A stretch of 64,000 bases of DNA from Laetmonice hystrix (GCA_965235115.1 OZ249437.1:8308001-8372000); one strand, 5' to 3'; counted from the stretch's first letter, positions 10,111-63,489 are shown. Translations and numbers: made by a program. The notes: generated by a model not told the origin, from the letters alone.

Positions 10111-10441
10111 GAATGTATAGGACAGTTTTCGTAAACGTATGACAGGTGTCGTCATACTACACTGTTTGCTCCGATGTCCTACGATAACTTCCTAGGATAC
10201 GATACAATACAATGCCCTGCCGTATCTTGGCGAATGTATAGGACAGTTTTCGTGCTGTGTATAAACGTATGACAGGTGTCATCTACACTGTTTGCTCCGA
10301 TGTCCTTCGATAACTTCCTAGGATACGATACAATACAATGCCCTGCCGTATCTTGGCGAATGTATAGGGCAGTTTTCGTGTTATGTATTTACGTATGACA
10401 GGTGTCATCTACACTGTTTGCTCCGATGTATAACTTCCTAT
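10111..10441. repeat. Tandem repeat, ~121-126 bp unit, ~2.7 copies
   Basis: gaatgtataggacagttttcgt...gataacttcctaggatacgatacaatacaatgccctgccgtatcttggc recurs at 10111, 10232 and 10358. Confidence 0.95.
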
Positions 10442-16700: not shown

Positions 16701-17811
16701 AAACCCGGATCCGAAAAGGACACATCAGGGTGTTCTTACAGGCCATCTGTGTTTACTTTCCATTTCAGTTCTGACGGTGTGTGTCGGTTTTAGGTGAAAC
16801 CAGGAAGAGGTTAGTCACCAGCCACCAGGCTGAGTGGGGCCGGAGGACTCCTGCGCGACTCGCTCGGACCTTTTTGACTGGGAACGGCTTGGCAAGATCA
16901 AACAGTGACGAGTGGGGCAGACGGACACATTGCCACAGTCCCACTCACAGAGTCACCTGGCCTGGTCAGAGAAAAGGGACAGCCTGCTTGTGACGAGCTA
17001 CATATGAAAGGTTAAAAGGCTGACTCACTTTCTTGTCTATCCTGTGTCAATATCGGAAAGCTTCTGGTCTGGGTTCAGAAAAAAAACCACGGAGATAGCA
17101 TCAGAGCATTGACTTACATGTTGGACCCTGACCAGGCATAGTGCAGCTTTAAAACAGAAGCGAATATTGCTTGGAGGTGATGAAAAGGATTTTTTCATCA
17201 TCTTATTTTTAGGGGTAACTATTGTTAGCGAAAATGGCACAATCGCTACGTTAAATACCTCGCAAAATTACTTGTTATAGAGTATTCTATCATCGTCGTT
17301 GTCGGTGTCAAACTGACTGATAGGTTGAAATTCTTCAACTTGCGACAAATAGGTTTGAAGGAAGTATTCACTATGCGATTGAGTAGATTTGGGAGAAGAT
17401 CAGTATGTTGTCGTGGACCAGGATCATTCGAGATAGGCCAAAATGGAGGACTGCTCCGCTTGGCGGAGGTCTGCGCTCTACTGAACGCCCTCGAATTGCT
17501 ATAAATGTTTGCCTCTAGCCTCATCAGATCAGACTAGCATTGTGGTAGGGACATAAGGTGCTAGCATGTCACCTTAGATTCACCATTTGCTTTCTTTATG
17601 TCTGTATTCATAATACATCAAGGATTAGCATGGGTGTATGGGGACTCTTTGGTTGGTTATTTTGACCGAATTTGGGAGGATAGTTGCGGCCCCAGCCCCC
17701 AGCCCCCCCCCCCGGCTCGTACGCATATAAGGATTAAAAGAAGATGTTCGTAGGTGGTCCCATTCGGCGTGCCGTGTCGATACTAACCCCCAGACACACG
17801 TCACTCACGAT

Positions 17812-19135
17812 ACAACTACCAACCGGCAGCGTCCGTAACAAGACAGAATCTACCAGCGTCTCCTGGCCTTCAATAACGGGGCATGGGTTTGGTAGAGGAA
17901 CAGTTCACCAATACAACTCTACCAACCGGCAGCGTCCGAAACAAGACAGAATCTACCAGCGTCTCCTGGCCTTCAATAACGGGGCATGGGTTTGGTAGAG
18001 GAACAGTTCACCAATACAACTCTACCAACCGGCAGCGTCCGTAACAAGACAGAATCTACCAGCGTCTCCTGGCCTTCAATAACGGGGCATGGGTTTGGTA
18101 GATGAGCAGTTCACCAATACAACTACCAACCGGCAGCGTCCGAACAAGACAGAATCTACCAGCGTCTCCTGGCCTTCAATAACGGGACATGGGTTTGGTA
18201 GATGAGCAGTTCACCAATACAACTCTACCAACCGGCAGCGTCCGAAACAAGACAGAATCTACCAGCGTCTCCTGGCCTTCAATAACGGGACATGGGTTTG
18301 GTAGATGAGCAGTTCACCAATACAACTCTACCAACCGGCAGCGTCCGAAACAAGACAGAATCTACCAGCGTCTCCTGGCCTTCAATAACGGGGCATGGGT
18401 TTGGTAGATGAGCAGTTCACCAATACAACTACCAACCGCCAGCGTCTGAAACAAGACAGAATCTACCAGCGTCTCCTGGCCTTCAATAACGGGGCATGGG
18501 TTTGGTAGAGGAACAGTTCAACAATACAACTACCAACCGGCAGCGTCCGAAACAAGACAGAATCTACCAGCGTCTCCTGGCCTTCAATAACGGGGCATGG
18601 GTTTGGTAGATGAACAGTTCACCAATACAACTCTACCAACCGGCAGCGTCCGAAACAAGACAGAATCTACCAGCGTCTCCTGACAGGCCTTCAATAACGG
18701 GGCATGGGTTTGGTAGATGAACAGTTCACCAATACAACTACCAACCGGCAGCGTCCGAAACAAGACAGAATCTACCAGCGTCTCCTGGCCTTCAATAACG
18801 GGGCATGGGTTTGGTAGATGAGCAGTTCACCAATACAACTCTACCAACCGGCAGCGTCTGAAACAAGACAGAATCTACCAGCGTCTCCTGGCCTTCAATA
18901 ACGGGGCATGGGTTTGGTAGATGAACAGTTCACCAATACAACTCTACCAACCGGCAGCGTCCGAAACAAGACAGAATCTACCAGCGTCTCCTGGCCTTCA
19001 ATAACGGGGCATGGGTTTGGTAGATGAGCAGTTCACCAATACAACTCTACCAACCGGCAGCGTCCGAAACAAGACAGAATCTACCAGCGTCTCCTGGCCT
19101 TCAATAACGGGGCATGGGTTTGGTAGATGAGCAGT
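17812..19135. repeat. Satellite-like tandem array, 101-103 bp unit, 13 copies
   Basis: Unit caaccggcagcgtccgaaacaagacagaatctaccagcgtctcctggccttcaataacggggcatgggtttggtagatgagcagttcaccaatacaactctac. I counted 13 gggtttggtag occurrences. Confidence 0.97.
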
Positions 19136-20393
19136 TTAATGGATGTTAGAACAAAATGTTGGGGTGACACCAATAAAATGTATAGTCTCCTTTCATCAGT
19201 TGGAATGGCTGTCAGATTAGTGTGCCTCATAGCGGTAAGCTTTACACGTCGGCGTCATCAAAGTACACTGCCCTGTTATCAAAGCTGGAAAAAAATACAA
19301 TTTATAAAGACGCAACCAAATTATACTAAATTACTCGGCTTTTCTTAATTAATGGAAGTTTTGTAATGATCAATCGTTGTATTAGGAGGCTAGAGGAAAA
19401 AGAAATGACAAGAACAGAGATATTATCATATAGGAGGACAAAATTATCGTCGTTTGTATTTCTGCATGGGGAATCAAATACGTGCACAAAAGATTGGGAC
19501 TTATTAATATTGAGGTCAATATGGAATGGCTGCTACTTACCACCTACCATGGGAACATTCATTGTCTTTCAAGAATCGGGTTTTTCACAAAGTACAATTA
19601 GAGGAAGAGAAATAGCATCGATCGTTTTTCTTGCACACTGGAGGAGAACCACTTCTATTGTCAGTTAAATAAATGAAAACTTTACTTTCTGTTGTTGCTA
19701 CTATTTCATTTAAACCGCTACTGTTGCTTTCATCGTTGTCAGGAACTACGACATATTTTATGTCACATACGTTTAATGATGAATTATATAACGTACTTTC
19801 TTTAGACTTAATTGTTGTTTCGATGAAAAGAGTTTCTGCATGGGGTTGACATGAGTAGGAATCACAATGAATTGTTAATCCCTCCATTGTTTTTATTATC
19901 AGTGAAGAGAAGCACCGATTCGAGGGAGTAAAAGTTTTCTATTATTATTTAATCATACTCGTTGTGTTTGGGCAGGCACCCACCAACTATGGTACTGGTC
20001 GGGTACTGACGACGTGACGCAGAAGTTAATCCTCGACTGAACTAGATTTAGCCATTCCATTCCAAACGAATCTTTAGAACATTTTGTACTTTTTGTCTCA
20101 GATCTCCGTGGTCTCAGATCTCCGGGAGGTTAGCTGCATCGCCATGTGTTCTAATCTAACTATCCGAAATATCAGGTCTCAGTTGAGTCACACGTAATAA
20201 CTCTCATCTCCTCGGCGATATTTGGTTTACAATTTGCCTATCCAGACTCCACCGCCCATCAGGTAGCAGACGACCGGAGGTGTGAGCCCAAACAGCGACT
20301 CGCGCGTGCCCACTAAAGTCGGATTCAGCATCTAAACAATAGGAATCCATGCACCCGGAGTGCTGAGACCAACGGAGATCTGAGTGCGCGACA

Positions 20394-20623
20394 CAGGTGT
20401 GAACGGAATGTAAGTCCGCCGGTATGGAGGTCCGCCGGACCTGGATTCCTTAGTTATGCAGGTCCTAGTCATCAACTTCGTGGTATAAGACAATACATAT
20501 GTATAATTAAGAAAATCCAAATGAATTAGGGTTAAGGTTAGGATTAGAGATAGGATTATGAAGAAATATGTATATAATACAACATTACGGACTTCAATTC
20601 CTAGGAATGCAGGTCCATCAGAC
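20394..20623 (+). mobile_element. MITE family A, copy 1 (right end truncated)
   Basis: Colinear with 63617-63864 from CAGGTGTGAACGGAATGTAAGTCC through ttagggttaaggttaggattag to ctaggaatgcaggtc. Confidence 0.85.
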
Positions 20624-21143
20624 ATGAGTTGAGACTAGATACAGGCAGTTAGAATGGATCTTACATGAGTTGAGACTAGATACAGGCAGTTAGAATGGAT
20701 CTTACATGAGTTGAGACTAGATACAGGCAGTTAAAATGGATCTTACATGAGTTGAGACCAGATACAGGCAGTTAGAATGGATCTTACAGGAGTTGAGACT
20801 AGATACAGGCAGTTAGAATGGATCTTACATGAGTTGAGACCAGATACAGGCAGTTAGAATGGATCTTACATGAATTGACATACAGGCAGTTAGAATGGAT
20901 CTTACAGGAGTTGATACTAGATACAGGCAGTTAGAATGGATCTTACATGAGTTGAGACTACATACAGGCAGTTAGAATGGATCTTACATGAGTTGATACT
21001 AGATACAGGCAGTTAGAATGGATCTTACATGAATTGACACCAGATACAGGCAGTTAGAATGGATCTTACATGAATTGACACCAGATACAGGCAGTTAGAA
21101 TGGATCTTACAGGAGTTGAGACTAGATACAGGCAGTTAAAATG
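20623..21143. repeat. 41-bp minisatellite, ~12-13 copies
   Basis: Unit catgagttgagactagatacaggcagttagaatggatctta. Confidence 0.97.
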
Positions 21144-22919
21144 GAAATTAAAAACGAAATACCAAGGAAAGCTCGCGTCCGATTGAATCAGATGGATTTG
21201 GCAAGAAGGGTTGGATGCTACCAATGACAAATGTCGTGTCCGGGGTATCAAATCTTAACGAAAAAACAACAACAATTGTTATAACAATAATTTATTTTGT
21301 CCAACATTATCAAAAGCCATTGCTCTGAATTGGGCTTGTGTTTCATGTGAAAGTAGTTTTTTTTCTAGTGTGGCTCTTTGCAAAGTTTCCAGGCATTAAC
21401 ACTTGATATGGCAACTTTAAACAGGTTCCAGGGCGAAGTCTGAGGTTTTTCCTCTTCAGTTTTTTCCATTTCTGAGAAACTAATCCACTTAATTATGACC
21501 AATCCGTAAAAGCGAACATGTTTTTCATTTGACAGAGATTTAAGGACACGTTTCACGGAATGCCTTGGATCTGCATTGTTGAATCACCTTCAGAACCTAG
21601 TCATGTGCCTACGGTCGAGTCAACGCATTGAAAATTGGGAAAGGGGTTCAGTTGTACAGCCTAAGAGTTCGAAAATTATTTTGAATTCATTTCAAATTTT
21701 TTGTTGTAAAATAATACATGAAGAAGTATGACGTCATTTTGTAACAGTGCATGGTTAATATGGTGTCCCAAAAAAGTGCACAACCATATTAGCACACGGG
21801 TCACATTTGCGAGCTTCGCATGTTATGTTATATTTTATATGTCATTTATATGTATACATGTGTATGTACATGTATAAATGTCATAAGTTGACTTTACATG
21901 TCAAATCGTGAAAATGATACTGTGTGGCTGAAACCACCGACTTGGTACGTCCGCCTAGAGTGCATACCGAGTGCCTCGATCGTGACGACCGAAAACAGAA
22001 GCCACTTGGAGAATGTTTTCAGTTGATATTTTTCTCTCTCTCTGTCTGCTCACTGCACATCCGTGGCTCGATGGAAGCCGTAAAAAAACCATGCCTGTGG
22101 GTGGGCTTTATTGGCGAAGTAACATCAACCTACACGAGGCAAGGTTTAAAGACAATGGAAGACTGTCTAGACACAATAATATATCGTGCTTTATGTGACT
22201 AGACTCTCAAATTGATTAATGCATGTGCTTATGAATTGCTGGAAAGGTTATTTCTTTAGCAACCAATGAATATTATTATTATTGTCTGATGAACGTGCAG
22301 AATGGGAAGCTCAATGTTTATAAAGTTTTATTTGTTATCAATGATAACAACAAATAGAAAAAGATTAGTCTTTCACGCGGGAAAGATAGATTAAGAGAAA
22401 AGTGATAACTGCAATTTGAGCTTTTCATTTTCTCAAATTGATCCAGTACATTAGAAAATGCGACAAAAAGGTATTGGCTTGGTGTCCTTCGTTCTCGATG
22501 TGGAATCATATAAACAACTGTTTGACACAGAGAGCTCTTAGATCTTTTTATGGTGTGAGCAAAATTTGAGATAAAATGAAGCACAGTATAATATGTCACA
22601 GGTGAACGAGGGTTTAATATTAACAAGTGTCTGTTTCGTATCTCATATATGTTATTGAAGTATCCAGTTCATCTAGGTATTGGAGCGAAATTGTTTAGCT
22701 TTTGGTTACATTTTGTCCATCTGTACATTGGTCTCTATTGAGCGTTTTCTATATCTAGGGTTAGATATATTATGTGACAATGCTCGACCTCATCTGGTCA
22801 GATATAGCATCTTGTTTAATATCAGATACTGGCAACTGCCCTCATTGTTCTCTGTATTTTTATATCGAAGATGCAGGCTTACGTGTTCTTTGTTTTGTTT
22901 CCAAAATGGCGGGTCCGCG

Positions 22920-24010: not shown

Positions 24011-24416
24011 GGGGGGGGGAGTAATGTAACATTATAATCCCGTGAGGATCGAGTAATATGGCACCCATTACGAGATACCGAGATGGCGGTATTTCTTGCG
24101 AAGGTTACCGCTAGTGTCCATATTCTACCCCCTCCCCCTCATCCAGGGGTGTTGGGGAGGCGGCTGTTATAGTAAAGGGTCTGTACATAACATACTGACA
24201 GGCATTCATGGACCAATTTACAAATAACATCTCACTCCAAAATATTATTTTTGACGTTGCTATATCTCAAACAAAAATGATAATTTAAAATCATTAAAAT
24301 CATTTAATTGTATAGAAATTTCTTCTATCCCGATTTCTAAACAATGGAATGTTTTAGGTTGTTGTTGCTCATAGGATTCCAAGCAATGGAGGGCTGAAGA
24401 CTGACAACTTATACTT

Positions 24417-25026
24417 ATGGACGTGATCCACTTGCGTTGCGATGCTTCCGATTCACCCCTTGCGCGGTCTTACGAGCTCTTCCGAGGGAAAAATTCCAAA
24501 TCGGGAATGCACGCAAGCATTTTAAGTGAATCACGCATTACGAGCGTTCACGGGTGTTCCGAGGGCTTCCGACGTCTTACGAGTGCCAGAGCGCTCTCGG
24601 GACCTCCTTACGAGCAGATCAAAAAGTTAGATAATCGGAAAAGTGCATAGTGCGTGGCCTCGCGTAAGATATCGGAGGATGCATGAAGAGCTCGTAAGCA
24701 CTCGGAAGAGCGCAGAAGGTCTAAAGCGAACCCAAAAACGTCTTCCATTTCTTGTTCCTCACCTTCGGCCAAAAAGGCGAAGGTGAGGGCAATTATTGCG
24801 ACCTCCTCGGGCTTCATTTTAATGTCCTCTGACAATCGGAAGAGCTCTTAAGACCCTACAAGTGGATTATGCTTTTCGATTTTCTTACGATTTTCTTACG
24901 CGGGTTACGCAAGCCTACGATTCCTTACGCGGCCTTACGAGCACTTTTACGTACTTCCGAATCTTCCGAGAGAGAGAAAATCGTAGAGGCGCGGAAGCCA
25001 TCGCAACGCAAGTGGATCACGTCCAT
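24417..25026 (-). mobile_element. Non-autonomous PIF/Harbinger derivative
   Basis: ~34-bp TIRs ATGGACGTGATCCACTTGCGTTGCGATG(G)CTTCCG. The minus strand keeps a transposase-like N-terminus, MKPEEVAIIALTFAFL, then RNGRRFWVR after a frameshift. Flanks are TTA / TTC, close to a TWA TSD. Confidence 0.7.
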
Positions 25027-25183
25027 TCGGTGACCAAGGCGAAATGGTGTTTGCTTCAGCGGCAGTTCCTATTTTTCATAGAGTGCAAATAGAGAGTTTC
25101 AGCAGCGTTTAATGATGCTATGTATGGGTGGTCGAAGATGGACGGATAGACGATGTTTCAGTTGTTTCTGGTTGTGTTTGCAG

Positions 25184-25352
25184 AAAGAGTTCAAGCCGGT
25201 CAAGTACTTCTCCATCGACCGGGTGTTCCGGAACGAGACACTGGATGCCACCCACCTGGCCGAGTTTCACCAGATTGAGGGGCTGGTAGCCGACTTCAAC
25301 CTGACGCTGGGGGATCTTATGGGGATCATCAACCAGTTCTTCATCAAACTAG
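25184..25352 (+). CDS. FARSA: Phenylalanyl-tRNA synthetase alpha subunit, internal exon (169 nt)
   Basis: Acceptor ttgtgtttgcag| and donor CTAG|gtaagt. Translates [56 protein letters not shown]+G, which contains class II aaRS motif 2 of eukaryotic PheRS-alpha (human: [37 protein letters not shown]...). Confidence 0.97.
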
Positions 25353-27368
25353 GTAAGTCCACCCTCACCGGCCGGGGCGGGGAGAGGAGGGGGGCCCTCA
25401 CCGGCCGGGGCGGGGCGGGGAGGGGGGGGGGGCACACCCTCTCTATAACCTTACACTGGGGTCTTATGATCATCAACCAGTTCTTCATCAAACTGGGTAA
25501 GTCCACCCTCACCGGCCGGGGCGGGGAGGGGAGGGGGGCACACCCTCTCTATAACCTCACACTGGGGTCTTATGATCATCAACCAGTTCTTCATCAAACT
25601 GGGTAAGTCAACCCTCATCGGCCGGGGCGGGGAGGGGGGGGGGCACACCCTCTCTATAACCTCACGCTGGGGTCTTATGATCATCAACCAGTTCTTCATC
25701 AAACTGGGTAAGTCCACCCTCACCGGCCGGGGCGGGGAGGGGAGGGGGGCCCTCACCGGCCGGGGCGGGGGGGGGGGGGGCACACCCTCTCTACAACCTC
25801 ACGCTGGGGTCTTATGATCATCAACCAGTTCTTCATCAAACTGGGTAAGTCCACCCTCACCGGCCGGGGCGGGGAGGGGAGGGGAGGGGCCCTCACCGGC
25901 CGGGGCGGGGAGGGGGGGGGGGCACACCCGCTCTACAACCTCACGCTGGGGTCTTATGATCATCAACCAGTTCTTCATCAAACTGGGTAAGTCCACCCTC
26001 ACCGGCCGGGGCGGGGAGAGGAGGGGGGGGGGGGGGCACACCCTCTCTATAACCTCACGCTGGGGTCTTATGATCATCAACCAGTTCTTCATCAAACTGG
26101 GTAAGTCAACCCTCACCGGCCGGGGCGGGGAGGGGGGGCACACCCTCTCTACAACCTCACGCTGGGGTCTTATGATCATCAACCAGTTCTTCATCAAACT
26201 GGGTAAGTCCACCCTCACCGGCCGGGGCGGGGAGGGGAGGGGAGGGGCCCTCACCGGCCGGGGCGGGGAGGGGGGGGGCACACCCGCTCTACAACCTCAC
26301 GCTGGGGTCTTATGATCATCAACCAGTTCTTCATCAAACTGGGTAAGTCCACCCTCACCGGCCGGGGCGGGGAGAGGAGGGGGGGGGGGGCACACCCTCT
26401 CTATAACCTCACGCTGGGGTCTTATGATCATCAACCAGTTCTTCATCAAACTGGGTAAGTCAACCCTCACCGGCCGGGGCGGGGAGGGGGGGGGGGGGCA
26501 CACCCTCTCTACAACCTCACGCTGGGGTCTTATGATCATCAACCAGTTCTTCATCAAACTGGGTAAGTCCACCCTCACCGGCCGGGGCGGGGAGGGGGGG
26601 CACACCCTCTCTACAACCTCACGCTGGGGTCTTATGATCATCAACCAGTTCTTCATCAAACTGGGTAAGTCAACCCTCACCGGCCGGGGCGGGGAGGGGG
26701 GGCACACCCTCTCTACAACCTCACGCTGGGGTCTTATGATCATCAACCAGTTCTTCATCAAACTGGGTAAGTCCACCCTCACCGGCCGGGGCGGGGAGGG
26801 GAGGGGAGGGGCCCTCACCGGCCGGGGCGGGGAGGGGGGGGGCACACCCGCTCTACAACCTCACGCTGGGGTCTTATGATCATCAACCAGTTCTTCATCA
26901 AACTGGGTAAGTCCACCCTCACCGGCCGGGGCGGGGAGAGGAGGGGGGGGGGCACACCCTCTCTATAACCTCACGCTGGGGTCTTATGATCATCAACCTG
27001 TTCTTCATCAAACTGGGTAAGTCAACCCTCACCGGCCGGGGCGGGGAGGGGGGGGGGCACACCCTCTCTACAACCTCACGCTGGGGTCTTATGATCATCA
27101 ACCAGTTCTTCATCAAACTGGGTAAGTCCACCCTCACCGGCCGGGGCGGGGAGGGGGGGGGCACACCCGCTCTACAACCTCACGCTGGGGTCTTATGATC
27201 ATCAACCAGTTCTTCATCAAACTGGGTAAGTCCACCCTCACCGGCCGGGGCGGGGAGAGGAGGGGGGGGGGGCACACCCTCTCTATAACCTCACGCTGGG
27301 GTCTTATGGGAAACATCAACCAGTTCTTCATCAAACTGGGTAAGTCAACCCTCACCGGCCGGGGCGGG
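25317..27368 (+). repeat. Tandem array of the FARSA exon 3' end plus 5' splice site, 18 copies including the real exon
   Basis: cttatg(..)atcatcaaccagttcttcatcaaact(a/g)g|gtaagtc(c/a)accctcaccggccggggcgggga(G-tract)cacaccctctctataacctcacgctgggg, unit ~100-145 bp. I counted 18 copies of ttcttcatcaaact. Confidence 0.97.
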
Positions 27369-27779
27369 AGGAAGGTCGCATCAAGGTTCAATGTTAAATC
27401 CTTGTTTTAAAACATTAATAGCAGCACAGTCAAGTTGACGTTGCGTCAGTATCTTCTGAGGGACACGATTATTGAGATTGATATATAAACATACATGACA
27501 CATGCAACAAGCATACATGCAACAAGTAAACCTAACATTGGGCTATACCCCACAGTGTCTGCCATGTGCTGGGAACTCATTGGAAGTAGTATATTCCCGG
27601 AGCTCAGCGGTCACTCGCGGGCCTAAGTATGATCATAGGTGGTATGATTCTGTCTAACCTTTGACCGCCGACACCGTGTGTCGGCGGTCACCATCGGTAT
27701 CAGTCTCAGTGTGCAACTTGTTAAATTGTGCAACATCGATAACGTAATAATTATTTATCTCCATAATAACAGTTCCTCC

Positions 27780-28140
27780 AGCGTCAACAGGGGACACCGT
27801 ATTCCTCCCTACCGACCTTAACCTGCAAAAAGGTCTTCCTTATATCTCAAGGCAATCCTTCAACACAAAACACAACAACTGATGTAGAAACGGCTGTCGC
27901 GAGCCAGATATCATCCATCGAAACACAGTGTTCTATACAACAATCAGATCCAAGAATTATATCATGTTTAACAGATCTCTAATAAAGATCGGGACTAGTG
28001 AGAATGTCCACTAAATACTCTTCATTCTCCAGCTCGAACTCTCTAAATGATTATAACCCTGCCACAGGCATGGCACCGTTGTCAGGACTAATGTCAACTT
28101 TGTCAAACAACTGCTGCATTTTGGAACACTGCATCAGGAG
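27780..28140 (-). mobile_element. Decayed BEL/Pao LTR retrotransposon RT fragment
   Basis: The minus strand reads ...LVDILTSPDLY*...GLP*DIRKTFLQVKV. These resemble the BEL/Pao motifs LNDCLxTGPxL and ADIxKAFLQ(I/V). Confidence 0.45.
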
Positions 28141-28777
28141 CGTGTCTTAGAATTTGCAGAAAGTATATCTTGAGGACGATCCGTTTTTTTCAAGGGTGTT
28201 GTGTATTGTTCTATGTTCTATGTGTATTGTTGAACGTGATTTCGTGGCATCTGAAAGCCTTGGGCAGCATTTGAATACCCTGAGTTGTTTACACCCCCAG
28301 AGGCAAAGTGAAGAAGTGGACATTGAGATGTCTTGGTGACATACGATGGTCCCGTGGCGTCGTTCACTTATGGCTTGTTCCAATAGTGATCATCAGATAA
28401 CGCCGTCAGACATTGTTAAGAGAAGAACAGTTTAGGGCAGAAAAAGGGTGTGTACGTGGTAGATCTGGGGGTGATTCGTTATAACTCGATAGTCACCCAG
28501 TCTCTGGGGTAATATGGAGCCAGACGACTGGCGAACCAGTCGAGTTTGGGATTTAGGTATTATGGGATGTAGAGTTGGTCGCTTGACGACGGGTGGGGAT
28601 CGATCAACAAGCTCGCCGCCCGGCGGGGGAGGGGGGGGGGGTCTCCTGACATTCCTGTCAGAAAGCTGATCTCGGCTCATGATGCTGGGGACATACCACC
28701 TTACATGAGATCCTCCAGTCTGGTAGGACCCCAGAGACTGTCTGAACAAACAGAAAACACAACTTAGGCCTCTTGGT

Positions 28778-28813: not shown

Positions 28814-29060
28814 GCTTTCCGGAGGATGTACAGTGAATCCAACAGAAAGGTTGGGAGTTAAGCCTATCAGGGCCGCCAGGTGGCGCGAATCCTGACCAAT
28901 CCGTTCAACCTTGACCTCTGATTTCAATAACAGTCTGATTTCTACTAAAATTCGATGCCGTCTTTTTGCAGTCTGTCTGCCGTTTGGCCTCGCCGCCGTT
29001 TCTCCTCCTTTTCTGGTTACGACAAAAAAGTTCTTAGCAATAATGTAAAGCGTTTAGAAT

Positions 29061-29868
29061 TACTTGAACTCGTTATTTCAGCTGGAATACATTGTGCAGG
29101 TATCATATTCTACTTTAAAAAAAACTCGTTATTTTACCGGGAATACCGTCTGCAGGTATCATATTTTACTTGAACTCGTTATTTTACCGGGAATACCGTC
29201 TGCAGGTATCATATTTTACTTGAACTCGTTATTTTACCGGGAATGCCGTCTGCAGGTATCATATTTTACTTGAACTCGTTATTTTACCGGGAATACCGTC
29301 TGCAGGTATCATATTTTACTTGAACTCGTTATTTTACCGGGAATACCGTCTGCAGGTATCATATTTTACTTGAACTCGTTATTTTACCGGGAATAGCGTC
29401 TGCAGGTATCATATTTTACTTGAACTCGTTATTTTACCGGGAATACCGTCTGCAGGTATCATATTTTACTTGAAGTCGTTATTTTACCGGGAATACCGTC
29501 TGCAGGTATCATATTTTACTTGAACTCGTTATTTTACCGGGAATACCGTCTGCAGGTATCATATTTTACTTGAAGTCGTTATTTTACCGGGAATGCCGTC
29601 TGCAGGTATCATATTTTACTTGAAGTCGTTATTTTACCGGGAATACCGTCTGCAGGTATCATATTTTACTTGAACTCGTTATTTTACCGGGAATGCCGTC
29701 TGCAGGTATCATATTTTACTTGAACTCGTTATTTTACCGGGAATACCGTCTGCAGGTATCATATTTTACTTGAACTCGTTATTTTACCTGGAATACCGTC
29801 TGCAGGTATCATATTTTACTTGAACTCGTTATTTTACCTGGAATACCGTCTGCAGGTATCATATTTTG
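29061..29868. repeat. 50-bp minisatellite, ~16 copies
   Basis: Unit tgaactcgttattttaccgggaataccgtctgcaggtatcatattttact has an exact 50-bp period from 29171 to 29821, plus two diverged units at the left edge. Confidence 0.97.
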
Positions 29869-30515: not shown

Positions 30516-30920
30516 ATATTTGACTTCACTAATGACATTTGGTATACCCACCATGATATTTGACTTCACTAATGACATTTGGTATACCCACCATGATATT
30601 TGACTTCACTAATGACATTTGGTATACCCACCATGATATTTGACTTCACTAATGACATTTGGTATACCCACCATGATATTTGACTTCACTAATGACATTT
30701 GGTATACCCACCATGATATTTGACTTCACTAATGACATTTGGTATACCCACCATGATATTTGACTTCACTAATGACATTCGGTATACCCACCATGATATT
30801 TGACTTCACTAATGACATTTGGTATACCCACCATGATATTTGACTTCACTAATGACATTTGGTATACCCACCATGATATTTGACTTCACTAATGACATTT
30901 GGTATACCCATCAGGATATT
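30516..30920. repeat. 40-bp minisatellite, 10 copies
   Basis: Unit atatttgacttcactaatgacatttggtatacccaccatg; nearly identical copies. Confidence 0.97.
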
Positions 30921-37067: not shown

Positions 37068-38101
37068 CGTAGAACTTGGACTGGTTGGTTTCCGTAGATG
37101 AGACAGTGTTTGACATGAAAGGACAGCGTAGAACTTGGACTGGTTGGTTTCCGTAGTTGAGATGAAAGGACGGCGTAGAACTTGGACTGGTTGGTTTCCG
37201 TAGTTGAGATGAAAGGACGGCGTAGAACTTGGACTGGTTGGTTTCCGTAGATGAGATGAAAGGACGGCGTAGAACTTGGACTGGTTGGTTTCCGTAGTTG
37301 AGATGAAAGGACGGCGTAGAACTTGGACTGGTTGGTTTCCGTAGTTGAGATGAAAGGACGACGTAGAACTTGGACTGGTTGGTTTCCGTAGATGAGATGA
37401 AAGGACGGCGTAGAACTTGGACTGGTTGGTTTCCGTAGATGAGACAGTGTTTAACATGAAAGGACGGCGTAAAACTTGGACTGGTTGGTTTCCGTAGATG
37501 AGACAGTGTTTAACATGAAAGGACGGCGTAAAACTTGGACTGGTTGGTTTCCGTAGATGAGACAGTGTTTGACATGAAAGGACGGCGTAGAACTTGGACT
37601 GGTTGGTTTCCGTAGTTGAGACAGTGTTTAACATGAATGGACGGCGTAGAACTTGGACTGGTTGGTTTCCGTAGATGAGATGAAAGGACGGCGTAGAACT
37701 TGGACTGGTTGGTTTCCGTAGATGAGATGAAAGGACGGCGTAGAACTTGGACTGGTTGGTTTCCGTAGATGAGACAGTGTTTAACATGAAAGGACAACGT
37801 AGAACTTGGACTGGTTGGTTTCCGTAGATGAGATGAAAGGACGGCGTAGAACTTGGACTGGTTGGTTTCCGTAGATGAGATGAAAGGACGGCGTAGAACT
37901 TGGACTGGTTGGTTTCCGTAGATGAGACAGTGTTTGACATGAAAGGACGGCGTAGAACTTGGACTGGTTGGTTTCCGTAGATGAGATGAAAGGACGGCGT
38001 AGAACTTGGACTGGTTGGTTTCCGTAGATGAGATGAAAGGACGGCGTAGAACTTGGACTGGTTGGTTTCCGTAGATGAAACAGTGTTTAACATGAAAGGA
38101 C
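37068..38101. repeat. Minisatellite with 47-bp and ~59-bp unit variants, ~20 copies
   Basis: Unit gaaaggacggcgtagaacttggactggttggtttccgtagatgagat; the long variant inserts cagtgtttaaca. Confidence 0.97.
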
Positions 38102-38257
38102 GTTCCGGACGTCGGGTTTGTGAAAGTAATCTATGGATTAATCTACTGCCCTGTGTTTTCAAAATGTATTTCTATAACAAATGGTCTACCCGTGAACCCG
38201 GTGACCCCATCAAAAAAAAAGCTCCCATCGAGTCCAGTTGAATTGTTCAGTCTGGAC

Positions 38258-39967
38258 GGAGCTATAGATAACTCTGCTGGGTGTGGATGGAGGTATAGAT
38301 AACTCTGCTGGGTGTGGATGGAGGTGTAGATAACTCTGCTGGGTGTGGATGGAGGTATAGATAACTGCTGGGTGTGGATGAAGGTATAGCTAACTGCTGG
38401 GTGTGGATGGAGGTGTAGATAACTGCTGGGTGTGGATGGAGGTGTAGATAACTGCTGGGTGTGGATGGAGGTGTAGATAACTGCTGGGTGTGGATGGAGG
38501 TATAGATAACTGCTGGGTGTGGATGGAGGTATAGATAACTGCTGGGTGTGGATGGAGGTATAGATAACTGCTGGGTGTGGATGAAGGTATAGATAACTGC
38601 TGGGTGTGGATGGAGGTATAGATAACTGCTGGGTGTGGATGGAGGTATAGATAACTGCTGGGTGTGGATGGAGGTGTAGATAACTGCTGGGTGTGGATGG
38701 AGGTATAGATAACTGCTGGGTGTGGATGGAGGTATAGATAACTCTGCTGGGTGTGGATGAAGGTATGGATAACTGCTGGGTGTGGATGGAGGTATAGATA
38801 ACTGCTGGGTGTGGATGGAGGTATAGATAACTGCTGGGTGTGGATGGAGGTATAGATAACTGCTGGGTGTGGATGGAGGTGTAGATAACTCTGCTGGGTG
38901 TGGATGAAGGTATAGATAACTCTGCTGGGTGTGGATGAAGGTATGGATAACTGCTGGGTGTGGATGGAGGTATAGATAACTGCTGGGTGTGGATGGAGGT
39001 GTAGATAACTGCTGGGTGTGGATGAAGGTATAGCTAACTGCTGGGTGTGGATGGAGGTATAGATAACTGCTGGGTGTGGATGAAGGTATAGATAACTGCT
39101 GGGTGTGGATGGAGGTATAGATAACTGCTGGGTGTGGATGGAGGTATAGATAACTGCTGGGTGTGGATGGAGGTGTAGATAACTGCTGGGTGTGGATGGA
39201 GGTATAGATAACTGCTGGGTGTGGATGGAGGTATAGATAACTCTGCTGGGTGTGGATGAAGGTATGGATAACTGCTGGGTGTGGATGGAGGTATAGATAA
39301 CTGCTGGGTGTGGATGAAGGTATAGATAACTGCTGGGTGTGGATGGAGGTATAGATAACTCTGCTGGGTGTGGATGGAGGTATAGATAACTGCTGGGTGT
39401 GGATGGAGGTATAGATAACTGCTGGGTGTGGATGGAGGTATAGATAACTGCTGGGTGTGGATGGAGGTATAGATAACTGCTGGGTGTGGATGGAGGTATA
39501 GATAACTGCTGGGTGTGGATGGAGGTATAGATAACTGCTGGGTGTGGATGGAGGTATAGATAACTGCTGGGTGTGGATGGAGGTATAGATAACTGCTGGG
39601 TGTGGATGGAGGTGTAGATAACTCTGCTGGGTGTGGATGGAGGTATAGATAACTGCTGGGTGTGGATGGAGGTGTAGATAACTGCTGGGTGTGGATGGAG
39701 GTATAGATAACTGCTGGGTGTGGATGGAGGTATAGATAACTGCTGGGTGTGGATGGAGGTATAGATAACTGCTGGGTGTGGATGGAGGTATAGATAACTG
39801 CTGGGTGTGGATGGAGGTATAGATAACTCTGCCGGGTGTGGATGGAGGTATAGATAACTGCTGGGTGTGGATGGAGGTATAGATAACTGCTGGGTGTGGA
39901 TGGAGGTATAGATAACTGCTGGGTGTGGATGAAGGTATAGATAACTGCTGGGTGTGGATGGAGGTAT
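38258..39967. repeat. 29-bp (variant 31-bp) G-rich minisatellite, ~58 copies
   Basis: Unit agataact(ct)gctgggtgtggatggaggtat. Confidence 0.98.
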
Positions 39968-40889: not shown

Positions 40890-42613
40890 ATGGTTAGTGA
40901 AATGAGGGGGTGGTTGGGCTCCGTGTCCGGGACCTGTCAGAGACACGTGGAGATGGTGGTGGGGCTCCGTATCCGGGACCTGTCAGAGACACGTGGAGAT
41001 GGTGGTTGGGCTCCGTATCCTGGGCCTGTCAGAGACACGTGGAGATGGTGGTTAGTGGAATGATGGGGTGGTTGGGCTCCGTATCCTGGGCCTGTCAGAG
41101 ACACGTGGAGATGGTGGTTGGGCTCCGTATCCTGGGCCTGTCAGAGACACGTGGAGATGGTGGTTAGTGGAATGATGGGGTGGTTGGGCTCCGTATCCGG
41201 GGCCTGTCAGAGACACGTGGAGATGGTGGTTGGGCTCCGTGTCCGGGACCTGTCAGAGACACGTGGAGATGGTGGTTGGGCTCCGTATCCTGGGTCTGTC
41301 CGAGACACGTGGAGATGGTGGTTGGGCTCCGTATCCTGGGGCTGTCAGAGACACGTGGAGATGGTGGTTAGTGGAATGAGGGGGTGGTTGAGCTCCGTAT
41401 CCTGGGCCTGTCAGAGACACGTGGAGATGGTGGTTGGGCTCCGTATCCTGGGCCTGTCAGAGACACGTGGAGATGGTGGTTGGGCTCCGTATCCTGGGCC
41501 TGTCAGAGACACGTGGAGATGGTGGTTGGGCTCCGTATCCTGGGGCTGTCAGAGACACGTGGAGATGGTGGTTGAGCTCCGTATCCTGGGTCTGTCCGAG
41601 ACACGTGGAGATGGTGGTTGGGCTCCGTATCCTGGGGCTGTCAGAGACACGTGGAGATGGTGGTTAGTGGAATGAGGGGGTGGTTGAGCTCCGTATCCTG
41701 GGCCTGTCAGAGACACGTGGAGATGGTGCTTGGGCTCCGTATCCTGGGCCTGTCAGAGACACGTGGAGATGGTGGTTGGGCTCCGTATCCTGGGCATGTC
41801 AGAGACACGTGGAGATGGTGGTTGGGCTCCGTATCCTGGGCATGTCAGAGACACGTGGAGATGGTGGTTGGGCTCCGTATCCGGGACCTGTCAGAGACAC
41901 GTGGAGATGGTGGTTGGGCTCCGTATCCTGGGCCTGTCAGAGACACGTGGAGATGGTGGTTGGGCTCGGTATGGTGGTTGGGCTCCGTATCCTGGGCCTG
42001 TCAGAGACACGTGGAGATGGTGGTTGGGCTCCGTATCCGGGGCCTGTCAGAGACACGTGGAGATGGTGGTTGGGCTCCGTATCCTGGGCCTGTCAGAGAC
42101 ACGTGGAGATGGTGGTTAGTGGAATGAGGGGGTGGTTGAGCTCCGTATCCTGGGCCTGTCAGAGACACGTGGAGATGGTGGTTGGGCTCCGTATCCTGGG
42201 CCTGTCAGAGACACGTGCAGATGGTGGTTGGGCTCCGTATCCTGGGCCTGTCAGAGACACGTGGAGATGGTGGTTGGGCTCCGTATCCTGGGTCTGTCAG
42301 AGACACGTGCAGATGGTGGTTGGGTTCCGTATCCTGGGTCTGTCAGAGACACGTGCAGAAGGTGGTTGGGCTCCGTATCCTGGGCCTGTCAGAGACACGT
42401 GGAGATGGTGGTTGGGCTCCGTATCCTGGGCCTGTCAGAGACACGTGGTAATGGTGGTTGGGCTCCGTATCCTGGGCCTGTCAGAGACACGTGGAGATGG
42501 TGGTTGGGCTCCGTATCCTGGGCCTGTCAGAGACACGTGGAGATGGTAGTTAGTGGAATGAGGGGGTGGTTGAGCTCCGTATCCTGGGCCTGTCAGAGAC
42601 ACGTGGAGATGGT
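40890..42613. repeat. 46-bp G-rich minisatellite with a recurrent 20-bp insert, ~35 copies
   Basis: Unit gggctccgtatcctgggcctgtcagagacacgtggagatggtggtt; insert agtggaatga(g/t)ggggtggtt. Confidence 0.98.
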
Positions 42614-51422: not shown

Positions 51423-51618
51423 NNNNNNNNNNNNNNNNNNNNNNNNNNNNNNNNNNNNNNNNNNNNNNNNNNNNNNNNNNNNNNNNNNNNNNNNNNNNNN
51501 NNNNNNNNNNNNNNNNNNNNNNNNNNNNNNNNNNNNNNNNNNNNNNNNNNNNNNNNNNNNNNNNNNNNNNNNNNNNNNNNNNNNNNNNNNNNNNNNNNNN
51601 NNNNNNNNNNNNNNNNNN
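51423..51618. other. Assembly gap (196 N)
   Basis: Run of n characters. Confidence 1.
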
Positions 51619-52844: not shown

Positions 52845-53270
52845 TATAAATTGCGGCGTGCTTGAGTTACACAGGACTTTTACGTTCGTGTACACTCCAG
52901 ATAAAACTAACAGTGTAAACATTGCGGCGTGCTTGAATGGGTTACACATGACTTGTACGTTCGTGTACACTCCAGATAAAACTAACAATGTTAACATTGC
53001 GGCGTGCTTGAATGGGTTACACAGGCCTTGTACGTTCGTGTACACTCCAGATAAAACTAACAATGTATAAACATTGCGGCGTGCTCGAATGGGTTACACA
53101 GGCCTTGTACGTTCGTGTACACTCCAGATAAAACTAACAATGTATAAACATTGCGGCGTGCTTGAATGGGTTACACAGGCCTTGTACGTTCGTGTACACT
53201 CCAGATAAAACTAACAATGTATAAACATTGCGGCGTGCTTGAATGGGTTACACAGGCCTTGTACGTTCGT
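52845..53270. repeat. 72-77 bp tandem repeat, ~5.6 copies
   Basis: ttgcggcgtg starts at 52851, 52923, 52997, 53074, 53151 and 53228. Confidence 0.95.
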
Positions 53271-53280
53271 GGAAACGGCT

Positions 53281-58630: not shown

Positions 58631-59280
58631 TTGCACAGAGTGTACACGATCGGGCATCTTTATGAGATTCGTACATCTCGATTTGCGCCCTCAAGGTATT
58701 TACGATCTGCCCCCCCCCCCCTTTGCACTTTCAAAATCAGTTGATTTCCACGTGTATGCCTACAAAACACGTGACGTGTTGCTTGTTGTATGTGGCGCCA
58801 TCTGTTTCGTTTTATCTCACTCTGTATCAATAAAGGCGTGCACAGTTGCAATGTATAAAACAACTTGACGACTTAGGTTTCAGTATAATTCTTGATATTA
58901 TGTTCTGTCAATCCCAACTCGTCTAAGGGAAGGACAACGTTCGCCCCTCCCTCTGCCTGTCTACCTCTGTCTGTCTGTCTCTATCTCTGTCTCTCTCTGT
59001 CTCTGTCTAATACAAGACGCGGTATTGGAGTTCTATCGAAAACTACACGCCTCAAGTTACAGTGTATTCTGGGAGGTTGTCTTTTGAGGCAGAGTTCGTC
59101 TTCGTCATATTTCTAATTAGGGACTCGTCATTCTTATATTTGGACATTCGGGGGAGGTATATGACAGACAGCTTTCTGAAATGATCATTTGCCGTACAAG
59201 GCTATAGAAACATCCTTTCTGTGTGCTGTTGTTGTGCTGATATTAGTGGTATTTAATGTCTCTGTCATGCTGTGTTTCAG

Positions 59281-59358
59281 GCATTAAAAAGTTGCGCTTC
59301 AAACCGGCCTACAATCCTTACACGGAGCCCAGCATGGAAATCTTCAGCTACCATGAGG
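59281..59358 (+). CDS. FARSA: Phenylalanyl-tRNA synthetase alpha subunit, next internal exon (78 nt)
   Basis: Acceptor gctgtgtttcag| and donor GAGG|gtaggt. Phase-1 join to the previous exon gives [27 protein letters not shown], matching eukaryotic PheRS-alpha (human [27 protein letters not shown]). Confidence 0.97.
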
Positions 59359-61038: not shown

Positions 61039-61838
61039 GTCGGGGTTATCGTGTTAGCTGTGGAACATGAGCGATAACTTGGCCCGTTGGTGTCGGTTAT
61101 ACAGTCGGTCAGAGAGCAATCAATCCTATATGGTACCTGTGTTAAATAAACACACAGTATGACCGTCAGGGTTATCGTGTTAGGAGTGAAACATGAGGGA
61201 TAACTTGGCCCGTCAGTGTCCGTTATACAGTCGGCCAGAGAGCATTCAATCCTATGTTATATCAACATATGGTACCTATGTTAAATAAACACACAGTATG
61301 ACCGTCGGGGTTATCGTGTTAGGAGTGAAACATGAGCGATAACTTGTCCCGTTGGTGTCCATTATACAGTCGGTCAGAGAGCAATCAATCCTATGTTATA
61401 TCAACATATGGTACCTATGTTAAATAAACACACAGTATGACCGTCAGGGTTATCGTGTTAGGAGTGAAACATGAGCGATAACTTGGCCCGTTGGTGTCGG
61501 TTATACAGTCGGCCAGAGAGCAATCAATCCTATATGGTACCTGTGTTAAATAAACACACAGTATGACCGTCGGGGTTATCGTGTTAGCTGTGGAACATGA
61601 GCGATAACTTGGCCCGTTGGTGTCCGTTATACAGTCGGCCAGAGAGCAATCAATCCTATGTTATATCAACATATGGTACCTGTGTTAAATAAACACACAG
61701 TATGACCGTCAGGGTTATCGTGTTAGGAGTGGAACATGAGCGATAACTTGGCCTGTTGGTGTCCGTTATACAGTCGGCCAGAGAGCAATCAATCCTATAT
61801 GGTACCTATGTTAAATAAACACACAATATGACCATCCG
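61039..61838. repeat. Satellite-like array, ~126-140 bp unit, 6 copies
   Basis: Unit gggttatcgtgttag...catgagcgataacttggcccgttggtgtc(c/g)gttatacagtcgg(c/t)cagagagcaatcaatcctat(gttatatcaacat)atggtacct(a/g)tgttaaataaacacacagtatgaccgtc. Confidence 0.96.
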
Positions 61839-63489
61839 GGGAAGGGGAGATCCAGGGTCCTCCAACTCTTAAACTGGGGGTTACCCCCTCCAGTAGGGGC
61901 ATCAGATATATAATTCTAAACTGTTAAAGCTTTACGGCCCAGGATGGTATCGAAGTGCCCCTCCCCCCCCCCAACTGTTAATACTGGTCTGCGAATATCT
62001 TACCGTACCAATGTTTAATTACTTTTAACAAGCTGAACGCGCCACCTGTCTATTTGATTACATAATGGTGATAAGATATCAATTGGCATAGTGAAGCTGG
62101 AATTAACGATTACAATGTCAGCCTTTATACAGGCTCGAAGATTAGATTACATGTAATAATTCTAATATCTGTTTGAAGTTGATGTAGAATTTTCTTCCAT
62201 GCCCTTACTGACGTCCGACCCATTTGGGAAATAAGTTTCAACATATATATATGTTTGGGAATGAGCAAAGTTGTATTCTTTGTTTCGGTGTTGCTCAGAG
62301 ACGATGTCAATAATAGATGATGACTGAAGCTTACTTGAAGTGCGTTAGAACCCTGGGGAGACGGAGATAAAGTTGTATCACAGAATAAGCCCGGACAGCC
62401 GGAATCCCACATCGCATGGGTTGGCGGGCCCATGTGGTAAAGGCCAGGGCCGTTACAAGGCACGTGCCGCGCCCTGCCTTCCTGGGGCCTCTCCACCGTC
62501 CGGTAGAGCGTGATGCCCAATCCCTGGTCTGAATTATACATGGCCAGACCTGGTTCTGGTGCACAACATGCCTGGTCACTCGCCCAACTCCTTTCGACCT
62601 ATATGCCAAGATAGCGTTATCAATTATGCATGATACTGAGATTTCTGTGAATGAGAGGACCGTGTCCTGGACCCTCTGTAAAGTGTAATTTTCTTCGACG
62701 TCCTTTTTATGACCAGAGTGGGGCACCCAGACCAGGATACGGTGCCGTTTGAAGAGTTTTGTGTTCCAAATAAATTTGCCAGCTGCGCAGCTGAGTTGGA
62801 TCAAGTTTTACCGTCTCTTTACTGGGACTATTTCTAGCTGATCCTCTGTCTGGATATGAAGGCGTGGATCGGTGACAACTTTGGTATACGATCTGCCATG
62901 CGCAACGTGACCCCGCATAGTGGATTCTCAATTTTCTGTCGGAGTCGAAGGAGGGGGAAGGTTAAGTCGGGTTGTTTAGAGTATTGGGGGTATACTTGGT
63001 CAGTTTATTCCACGTCAGGGTGTAAGGGGTTCGGATGGAGTCAGATTAACATATAACCGTACTACCATCACATGTATCAGACTGCTGATTATAAAGTAAG
63101 TTCTGCCAATTTCTGACCATGATTCTTGTATAACAACTTTACAAGATTAAGCTCTCACGTTATGGTAATGAGGGTACAGTTATCCAACTGACAGGATTCG
63201 GTGTTACTTGCTGTCAGAGACATCTCATTAAGTACACTTTATTGGGGAAGCCTATCCATGTAATCAATGTAATATAATGTAATATAATGGAGTAAGACAC
63301 GATGGTCGTATCTTTAGATTGAGAATCGATATCTGAGGTGTTGCGACCTGTCATGGTCCGAGAGCGGGCCCGTAGCCAGGAGTCTAGATGCTGTGAGTAG
63401 TATATGGAAACGGTGGTCAGGATCAGGCTGGAGTCGTATGTATTCTGATATAGGCAGGGAGAGATTCTCATTCATGTTGCATGGTCGTA

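What the first reader, a model, noticed from the sequence alone, without database searches (positions are those of the whole stretch)
25317..27368. FARSA exon end and 5' splice site amplified into an 18-copy tandem array
Seen: the last ~30 nt of the exon (CTTATG..ATCATCAACCAGTTCTTCATCAAACT), the GTAAGT donor and the adjacent G-rich intron start are reiterated 17 more times over ~2 kb. The last copy (27301-27370) keeps CTTATGGG like the real exon, as expected if the array grew by unequal exchange between two founding copies. Established: FARSA is an essential housekeeping gene, and donor choice follows U1 complementarity and exon definition. Inference: the pre-mRNA presents 18 consensus donors in a row at the start of a 34-kb intron. 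These could act as decoys, a source of alternative donors, or a tunable length polymorphism. An expanded minisatellite built from a coding exon-intron junction is unusual.
Basis: partly seen in the sequence, partly recalled or inferred. Interest (0 to 1): 0.8.

Follow-up and report, generated by a model that had tools for sequence, protein, structure and literature searches.

The report
Minisatellite copying a FARSA splice donor
A 2-kb tandem repeat at the start of a FARSA intron copies the exon's last 56 bases and its splice donor 17 more times; this is a known oddity ("mirage" minisatellite), common in this genome, and the one RNA-type contig uses the true donor.

Summary
The window has 18 GGTAAGTC donors between 25352 and 27339. 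One is the authentic donor of a FARSA catalytic-core exon (25184-25352). The other 17 lie in a tandem array (25297-27368) of 102-144 bp units. Each unit carries about 51 nt derived from the exon's last 56 nt (not about 30), the donor, a G-rich intron start and a 13-nt linker. The unit occurs nowhere else in the 627-Mb assembly.

Inner copies are homogenised in a three-unit repeat of about 358 bp. Both edge copies are diverged, as unequal exchange predicts.

The extra donors pair with U1 almost as well as the real one (TGG|GTAAGT against TAG|GTAAGT; -10.3 against -10.5 kcal/mol). Donor 2 would add 48 residues in frame. Donors 3-18 would give premature stops.

One run from the same sample behaves like RNA. 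It has a 1598-nt contig that matches exactly 25181-25353 and has no depth in the array, so the dominant transcript uses the first donor.

This is a "mirage" minisatellite, known from amphioxus Adh3 and globin genes and from the human F7 intron-7 VNTR. The human ABCA7 intron-18 VNTR is a close relative.

The scan has already noted at least 11 such arrays on other DNA of this genome. The array is most likely a tolerated by-product, not a regulator. Its copy number and polymorphism were not verified.

The parts
25184..25352 (+). FARSA exon of 169 nt ([33 protein letters not shown]...FFIKL, plus the first base of a Gly codon), part of the class II catalytic core
   Evidence: Pfam PF01409 at 70 bits. 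Aligns with human FARSA 3l4g_A residues 343-398, E 1e-24. The acceptor cag is at 25181-25183. An RNA-type contig covers exactly this stretch.
25297..25352 (+). Exon tail of 56 nt, the coding part of the founding repeat unit
   Evidence: An alignment of the 18 junctions shows homology with the copies starting at CAACCT and none upstream of it. The TRF row of period 498 starts at 25297.
25353..25358 (+). Authentic 5' splice site, TAG|GTAAGT
   Evidence: It is the only donor with A at -2, and its duplex with the U1 5' end is -10.5 kcal/mol. The contig from run X4 ends its match at 25353.
25353..25844 (+). Array units 1-4 (144, 106, 105 and 137 nt), the slightly diverged 5' edge. Unit 1 is in frame and free of stops (+48 aa if donor 2 were used).
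   Evidence: This stretch is 92% identical to the reference three-unit block.
25845..26202 (+). Three-unit block 1 (long unit, then GAGAGG/TATAACC unit, then GTAAGTCAACC unit)
   Evidence: 97% identical to 26203-26562. Unit types are shown.
26203..26562 (+). Three-unit block 2, used as the reference
26563..26766 (+). Two short 102-nt units that interrupt the three-unit pattern
26767..27121 (+). Three-unit block 3
   Evidence: 98% identical to 26203-26562.
27122..27368 (+). Last block: units 16 and 17 plus the truncated unit 18 (27340-27368). The exon-derived piece before donor 18 keeps the ancestral GGG of CTTATGGG.
   Evidence: Unique intron sequence follows from about 27369.
59281..59358 (+). 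Next FARSA exon ([27 protein letters not shown]), joined to 25352
   Evidence: PF01409 profile positions 148-180 match at C2:8367259.

Best explanation
This is a boundary-spanning ('mirage'-type) minisatellite. A tandem duplication of about 100 bp covered the last 56 nt of the FARSA exon, its donor and the first 40-50 nt of the intron. The downstream copy lay inside the intron and was free to change: it lost 5 nt and changed -2 A to G. Unequal exchange or replication slippage then amplified it to 17 copies, most recently in a three-unit register of about 358 bp.

The G-rich, G-quadruplex-prone part of the unit may add to its instability. That step is inferred.

Splicing pairs the first donor with the acceptor at 59280. 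This donor lies 169 nt from the upstream acceptor and has the best U1 match. All 17 look-alike donors are removed inside the 33.9-kb intron.

The array is therefore a tolerated by-product of a genome that makes minisatellites everywhere. Any rare use of donors 3-18 would give premature stops and probably nonsense-mediated decay.

Shown here: the anatomy, uniqueness in the assembly, the homogenisation pattern, the strength and reading frame of each donor, and use of the first donor in the dominant RNA-type contig. Inferred: the order of events, the role of G-quadruplexes, neutrality, and decay of minor isoforms.
For: There are 18 donors and three unit types in a three-unit repeat. Blocks are 97-98% identical to each other, and the 5' edge block is 92% identical. 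The edge copies J01 and J18 are diverged and the inner copies homogenised. This is the pattern reported for amphioxus mirages (PMC3087553).

The unit is unique to this locus. FARSA is single-copy: this exon matches only once in the assembly, and the C18 hits look like a separate paralogue, probably mitochondrial FARS2 by inference.

Run X4 has a 1598-nt contig whose positions 1014-1186 match exactly 25181-25353. X4 has no depth from 25372 to 27515.

Tandem arrays with TRF score of 300 or more cover about 11.1 of the 64 kb, in 11 arrays. With about 17% coverage, the chance that at least one of four junctions lies in an array is about 0.5 (my arithmetic).

The eight variable columns of the unit alignment avoid the 9-nt donor, but chance alone would do this with probability about 0.47. 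So nothing shows constraint on the extra donors (my arithmetic).

In human F7, identical downstream pseudo-donors stay silent because the most upstream site is chosen (PMC1557585). The scan has at least 11 independent notes of such arrays in this genome.
Against: The extra donors are nearly as good as the real one for U1 pairing (-10.3 against -10.5 kcal/mol), so their silence is not explained by weakness.

The RNA evidence is a single assembled contig from a run whose type is not on record. Contigs drop rare isoforms. This contig also carries the non-reference alleles at 25276 and 25312, so it may come from the other haplotype, whose array state is unknown.

No long read, second individual or related species could be examined. 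Copy number, polymorphism and age are therefore untested.
Confidence: 0.8

Rival explanations
1. The array has a function in RNA processing. Its 17 strong U1 sites and 21 G-run clusters would act as a U1 snRNP landing pad. This could speed use of the authentic donor or protect the 34-kb intron from premature cleavage and polyadenylation. Alternatively the array is a dosage valve that diverts part of the transcripts to donors 3-18 and so to nonsense-mediated decay.
For: All 17 donors keep a perfect GTAAGT and near-full U1 pairing. The exon sits between introns of about 170 kb and 33.9 kb, where extra U1 binding could help. In ABCA7, the length of a VNTR that includes the exon-18 donor correlates with exon skipping and lower expression, and one extra unit is sometimes retained (PMC5954066).
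Against: The copies are too young and too homogenised for donor conservation to mean anything (probability about 0.47 by chance). The RNA-type run has no depth in the array. Other junction arrays in this genome copy acceptors as often as donors, which fits random duplication better than a U1-specific role. In the F7 model the pseudo-sites have no effect on the choice of the first site.
Confidence: 0.08
2. Donor 2 (25497) gives a real second protein isoform with a 48-residue insertion ([13 protein letters not shown]...[11 protein letters not shown]) in the catalytic core.
For: Unit 1 is 144 nt, in frame and free of stops. The insert ends with the same FFIKLG as the exon. The resulting exon would be 313 nt, still within usual exon-definition range.
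Against: No contig supports it. The insert falls after residue 398 of the conserved class II core. No protein among the listed database hits extends into the repeat. Only one of the 17 extra donors is both in frame and stop-free, which chance readily gives.
Confidence: 0.03
3. The array, or its length, is an assembly artefact, for example an over-expanded or mis-joined repeat.
For: No listed read or contig spans the array. All four runs come from the one sample that probably gave the assembly. Short-read contigs break at both edges, 25350 and 27362. The amphioxus paper reports that a mirage was aberrantly assembled in a genome draft.
Against: The units show ordered variation: three types, a 33-nt internal duplication, differing G-run lengths and diverged edges. 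Artefactual expansion does not produce this. Contigs from the DNA runs lie in 29 of 30 bins, including the array. Breaks at exactly the array edges are what a true repeat gives.
Confidence: 0.05

Closest known systems
'Mirage' minisatellites of amphioxus (Adh3, Canestro et al. 2002, as cited in PMC3087553; globin genes BflGb6 and BflGb9, PMC3087553)
   Same: These are tandem repeats whose units span an exon-intron boundary. Units are 10-160 bp and many carry AG/GT signals. Regular splicing is kept. Copies evolve in concert inside the array while the boundary copies are excluded from homogenisation. The suggested mechanism is unequal crossing-over.
   Different: This array is in a different, non-chordate-looking genome, according to earlier notes that were not tested here. 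It has more copies (17 extra, against 1-6 in the globin genes) and a three-unit higher-order repeat. Allelic length variation was shown in amphioxus but could not be tested here.
Human F7 intron-7 37-bp VNTR (Borensztajn et al. 2006, PMC1557585)
   Same: The first repeat element spans the exon-intron boundary, so the authentic donor is followed by a row of functional pseudo-donors that stay silent. Only the most upstream site is used.
   Different: F7 has 5-9 units of 37 bp with pseudo-sites identical to the real one. Here there are 17 units of 102-144 bp, and the pseudo-sites differ at -2 (G for A). Splice-site choice was tested by mutagenesis in F7. Here it rests on one RNA-type contig.
Human ABCA7 intron-18 25-bp VNTR (De Roeck et al. 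2018, PMC5954066)
   Same: This intronic VNTR directly abuts an exon and includes its donor. Use of a cryptic donor one unit downstream gives a frameshift and nonsense-mediated decay.
   Different: The ABCA7 repeat starts at intron position +1 and holds no exon sequence. Its length correlates with skipping of the next exon and with lower expression. No such effect is shown here.
G-quadruplex-forming minisatellites (my own recollection of human CEB1 and CEB25, not checked here; the SLC6A3 VNTR that forms G-tetrads is PMC9909461, seen as a search-list abstract only)
   Same: The units are G-rich with four or more G-runs on one strand: 21 motifs in 2 kb, against 8 in the other 62 kb. Such sequence is known to be unstable.
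   Different: G-quadruplex formation and its role in instability are inferred here, not tested. The other arrays in this window are not G-rich.

Membership tests
Mirage (exon-intron boundary-spanning) minisatellite | The repeat unit spans an exon-intron boundary, and the authentic junction is the terminal unit of the array | tested here: met
   Each unit holds about 51 nt derived from the exon's last 56 nt (25297-25352), the donor and the intron start. The authentic junction is copy 1.
Mirage (exon-intron boundary-spanning) minisatellite | Minisatellite-scale units in head-to-tail array | tested here: met
   There are 17 extra units of 102-144 bp, with TRF scores up to 2254.
Mirage (exon-intron boundary-spanning) minisatellite | Regular splicing is kept and the extra splice signals are not used | tested here: met
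   The 1598-nt contig of run X4 matches only 25181-25353, and X4 has zero depth in the array. The caveats are that this is one contig, the run type is not on record, minor isoforms are invisible, and the contig carries the non-reference alleles.
Mirage (exon-intron boundary-spanning) minisatellite | Concerted evolution inside the array, with boundary copies left out | tested here: met
   Inner copies are identical within each unit type. Copies J01 and J18 carry the ancestral GGG and private changes. Blocks are 97-98% identical, against 92% for the 5' edge block.
Mirage (exon-intron boundary-spanning) minisatellite | Length polymorphism or instability between alleles | not testable with these tools
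   Only one sample holds the locus, as short-read contigs. The joints seen inside the array have flanks under 31 nt and are not reliable.
F7-type silent pseudo-donor VNTR | [quoted passage not shown] | tested here: not met
   The authentic site is TAG|GTAAGTCC. The copies are TGG|GTAAGTC(C/A). They differ at -2, although U1 duplex energy is nearly equal at -10.5 and -10.3 kcal/mol.
F7-type silent pseudo-donor VNTR | Only the most upstream donor is used, and pseudo-sites work when it is removed | tested here: inconclusive
   Use of the first donor is supported. Whether the pseudo-sites are functional can only be tested by mutagenesis in a minigene.
   No RNA contig uses them, but contigs cannot show rare isoforms, and no raw RNA reads exist for this organism.

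The most novel reading that the evidence does not exclude
The junction array is kept because it does something. A dense pad of 17 near-consensus U1 sites and G-runs sits at the head of a 34-kb intron, in an essential gene whose exon lies stranded between introns of about 170 kb and 34 kb. Such a pad could secure recognition of the authentic donor or suppress premature intronic polyadenylation. Its copy number would then tune FARSA output, as reported for the ABCA7 VNTR. More widely, the many junction arrays in this genome could be a lineage-specific way of buffering splice sites in repeat-swollen introns.
Probability: 0.06. Interest if true: 0.6.

Novelty: new member of a known kind. Interest (0 to 1): 0.25.

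Why it matters
On its own this is one more example of a described oddity, so it matters little. It is a clean natural test case, though. Eighteen near-equal donors compete for one acceptor 34 kb away in an essential single-copy gene, and the first donor wins in the one contig available. This matches the rule that the most upstream site is chosen, worked out on human F7, and it appears to extend that rule to a distant animal lineage.

Together with the scan's other notes, it adds to the case that this genome produces junction-spanning minisatellites on a large scale. That bears on how splice-site choice stays robust, and on the old idea that such duplications can create new introns or exons.

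Tried and rejected
RNA runs: two searches found only four runs, all from one sample, and none is on record as RNA. Only the contig-level inference from X4 was possible.

Read support for copy number: the single read-laying run gave short contigs only, and none spans the array. The summed word depths cannot give a copy number. Joints inside the array (25782 to 27247, 26043 to 26482, 26501 to 27039) have flanks of 21-22 nt and were discounted.

Other species: a search with the 164-aa read-through ORF returned 1171 FARSA fragments. None of the 120 listed extends into the repeat, and the best reach 80-86% identity over the exon only. So no close relative was available and the orthologous intron could not be compared. 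The DNA of the contig that encodes P0001 is not held.

Source of the 13-nt linker CACACCCTCTCTA: it has no other copy in the window, so a templated-insertion origin could not be shown.

RNA structure as the reason for donor choice: local folding gives the authentic donor a higher unpaired probability (0.064, against at most 0.010 for the copies). However, all donors are predicted to pair with the same exon-derived CUUAU stretch, and G-rich RNA folds are unreliable. I give this little weight.

CpG island or promoter reading: there are 23 GGGGCGGGG boxes, but CpG observed/expected is only 0.45 and nothing shows transcription from the array. I dropped it.

The in-array ORFs of up to 182 aa on both strands have no Pfam match. 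They are by-products of the periodicity.

The Canestro et al. 2002 paper (PMC117041) is not held. It is cited only through PMC3087553.

Full report
**1. What is there**

Reading 25100-27700 and counting motifs shows 18 exact GGTAAGTC sites from 25352 to 27339. The core CAACCAGTTCTTCATCAAACT occurs 17 times exactly; an eighteenth copy has one substitution. Tandem Repeats Finder reports the array as 25297-27368, with periods of about 102-106, 137-142 and 358 and scores up to 2254. Cutting the region at the donors gives 17 full units of 102-144 nt and a truncated eighteenth of 29 nt, after which unique intron sequence follows.

**2. The gene**

The exon is 25184-25352, behind a tttgcag acceptor. 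Its 56 codons match Pfam PF01409 (class II tRNA-synthetase core F) at 70 bits. They align end to end with human FARSA residues 343-398 in 3l4g_A, E 1e-24.

The next coding piece, [26 protein letters not shown], starts at 59281 behind tttcag and ends at 59358 before GTAGGT. The intron is therefore 33,928 nt. It includes a 196-N masked run at 51423-51618, which I left alone.

Genome-wide, this exon matches only once. The other PF01409 hits on contig C18 look like a separate gene, probably the mitochondrial paralogue FARS2 (inferred). The preceding FARSA exon lies at C2:8163522-8163638, about 170 kb upstream of our exon. This small exon thus sits between two very large introns.

**3. Anatomy of the unit**

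I aligned the 18 junctions from 66 nt upstream to 34 nt downstream of each donor. Homology between the real exon and the copies begins at CAACCT, near 25297, and there is none upstream of it.

- Each unit derives from 56 nt of exon, not about 30. The copies have lost GA and GGG, which leaves about 51 nt.
- After the exon-derived part come the donor, a G-rich intron start (CCACCCTCACCGGCCGGGGCGGGGAGGGG...) and a 13-nt linker, CACACCCTCTCTA. The linker has no other copy in the window.
- Long units carry an internal 33-nt duplication of the CCCTCACCGGCCGGGGCGGGG segment.
- There are three unit types: long; GAGAGG...TATAACC; and GTAAGTCAACC. They recur in the same order in units 5-7, 8-10, 13-15 and 16-18, giving a higher-order repeat of about 358 bp.
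- Blocks are 97-98% identical to each other. The 5' edge block is 92% identical.
- Both edge copies are the odd ones out. The exon copy is held by coding constraint.
- Inner copies homogenised and edges left out is the classic signature of unequal exchange. The same pattern is described for amphioxus arrays (PMC3087553).
- The 360-bp block has no match anywhere else in the 627-Mb assembly. It is a local amplification, not a dispersed element.

**4. The donors**

The authentic site is TAG|GTAAGTCC. All 17 copies are TGG|GTAAGTC(C/A). Predicted duplex energy with the U1 5' end (AUACUUACCUG, from established knowledge) is -10.5 kcal/mol for the authentic site and -10.3 for the copies.

- Donor 2 would add 144 nt, in frame and free of stops (+48 aa).
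- Donor 3 would shift the frame.
- Donors 4-18 would run into the TAA of donor 3 at 25604-25606. Such transcripts should be targets of nonsense-mediated decay (inference).

Across the inner copies, 8 of about 100 alignment columns vary and none falls in the 9-nt donor. Chance alone would give that with probability about 0.47 (my arithmetic). Donor conservation is therefore not evidence of selection.

The only YAG in each unit is CCAG, 23 nt before each pseudo-donor, and it has a poor pyrimidine tract. The copies therefore cannot be defined as exons of their own (inference).

**5. Which donor is used**

No run on record as RNA holds the locus. All four holders come from one sample.

Run X4 held half of the exon's words but only 6% of the words from the 3-kb stretch. 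When laid on 24300-28300 it gave a 1598-nt contig whose positions 1014-1186 match exactly 25181-25353, while the rest of the contig lies elsewhere. X4 has no depth from 25372 to 27515.

The three extra matched bases on the left (CAG) and the one on the right (G) are what the neighbouring exons would supply. The orthologous upstream exon in L010 ends in CAG, and the exon at 59281 starts with G.

I read X4 as RNA-type data and the contig as the FARSA mRNA spliced at the authentic donor.

Caveats:
- This is a single contig, and contigs hide rare isoforms.
- The contig carries the non-reference synonymous alleles at 25276 (ATT to ATA) and 25312 (GGG to GGC). It may come from the other haplotype.
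- The three DNA runs are short-read contigs that break at 25350 and 27362, exactly the array edges. None spans the array.
- The array is thus supported as a repeat in the reads, but its copy number rests on the assembly.

**6. Context**

With a TRF score of 300 or more, the window holds 11 separate arrays covering about 11.1 kb, or 17%. If arrays fell at random, the chance that at least one of the window's four exon junctions lies in one is about 0.5 (my arithmetic).

The scan's notebook lists at least 11 other reports of junction-spanning arrays in this same genome, copying donors and acceptors alike. Several have follow-ups reaching the same reading. These notes gave me the term "mirage" and the F7 lead, and I then checked both in the papers.

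**7. Known relatives**

- Ebner et al. [quoted passage not shown] 2002. Units are 10-160 bp and many carry AG/GT signals. Splicing is normal, alleles differ in length, and evolution is concerted with the boundary copies excluded.
- Borensztajn et al. 2006 (PMC1557585) show that the human F7 intron-7 37-bp VNTR puts 5-9 identical donors in a row. All are functional, yet only the most upstream is used. Downstream sites with up to 91% consensus value do not compete.
- De Roeck et al. 2018 (PMC5954066) describe the ABCA7 intron-18 VNTR, which includes the exon-18 donor. There a one-unit retention isoform exists and repeat length correlates with exon-19 skipping.

The present array meets four of the five mirage features I could list. 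The fifth, length polymorphism, cannot be tested here.

**8. Mechanism**

Most likely (about 0.8): a duplication of about 100 bp across the junction put a second junction into the intron. That copy drifted, losing 5 nt and changing -2 A to G, and was then amplified by unequal exchange or slippage, lately in three-unit steps.

The sense strand of the array has 21 G-quadruplex motifs, against 8 in the rest of the window. It also has 23 GGGGCGGGG boxes, and its GC content is 63% against 44% for the window. Such sequence is prone to replication trouble, which may have helped expansion. This is inference from general knowledge of G-rich minisatellites.

Splicing takes the first donor. It is the only one 169 nt from the acceptor, and it has the best U1 match. 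The array then leaves with the intron.

Rivals are a U1-pad or dosage-valve function (0.08), a real +48-aa isoform (0.03) and an assembly artefact (0.05).

**9. Verdict**

It is a new member of a known kind, already seen many times by this scan in the same genome. Interest is 0.25.

Noticed in passing
window 10132-10429, 17810-19136, 20622-21145, 29060-29867, 30516-30920, 37110-38102, 38253-39967, 40903-42613, 52850-53271, 61039-61841: Ten further minisatellite arrays lie in this window, with units of 29-139 bp and up to 58 copies. With the FARSA array, tandem repeats cover about 17% of the window.
   Followed up: partly
window 24300-25030: A very high-copy dispersed repeat lies here. Summed word depth is about 10^4, against about 40 in the unique flanks, with many variant contigs and opposite-strand joints. 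It ends about 155 nt upstream of the FARSA acceptor. The RNA-type run X4 also has depth here.
   Followed up: no
G000:C2:8161532-8163638 compared with window 25184 (C2:8333184): The 5' exons of FARSA are packed within about 2 kb. An intron of about 170 kb then precedes the exon studied here, and one of 34 kb follows it. The gene's geometry is very uneven.
   Followed up: partly
P0001 (ENA sample ERZ25070167, 28-kb contig); L010:335-425 compared with L010:465-555 (Logan SRR28400124): Two other organisms carry a partial duplicate of the acceptor side of this same FARSA exon just upstream of the real one. P0001 reads LKVLCVFVLQKEFRPVKY(S/F)SIDRVF twice in tandem. L010 has a diverged copy with its own CCAG acceptor about 130 nt upstream. 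Junction duplications at this exon thus recur in other lineages.
   Followed up: partly
window 25276 and 25312: There are two synonymous variants in the exon: T to A (Ile) and G to C (Gly). They are seen in runs X2, X3 and X4 but not X1, all from the same sample, so the individual is probably heterozygous here. The right flank 27362-27485 also shows two alleles.
   Followed up: partly
window 51423-51618: A run of 196 N lies inside the FARSA intron.
   Followed up: no
window 25362-25427, 25717-25781 and the long units at 25845, 26203, 26767: A nested 33-nt duplication (CCCTCACCGGCCGGGGCGGGG...) inside some units creates the long unit type. It is a repeat within the repeat.
   Followed up: yes
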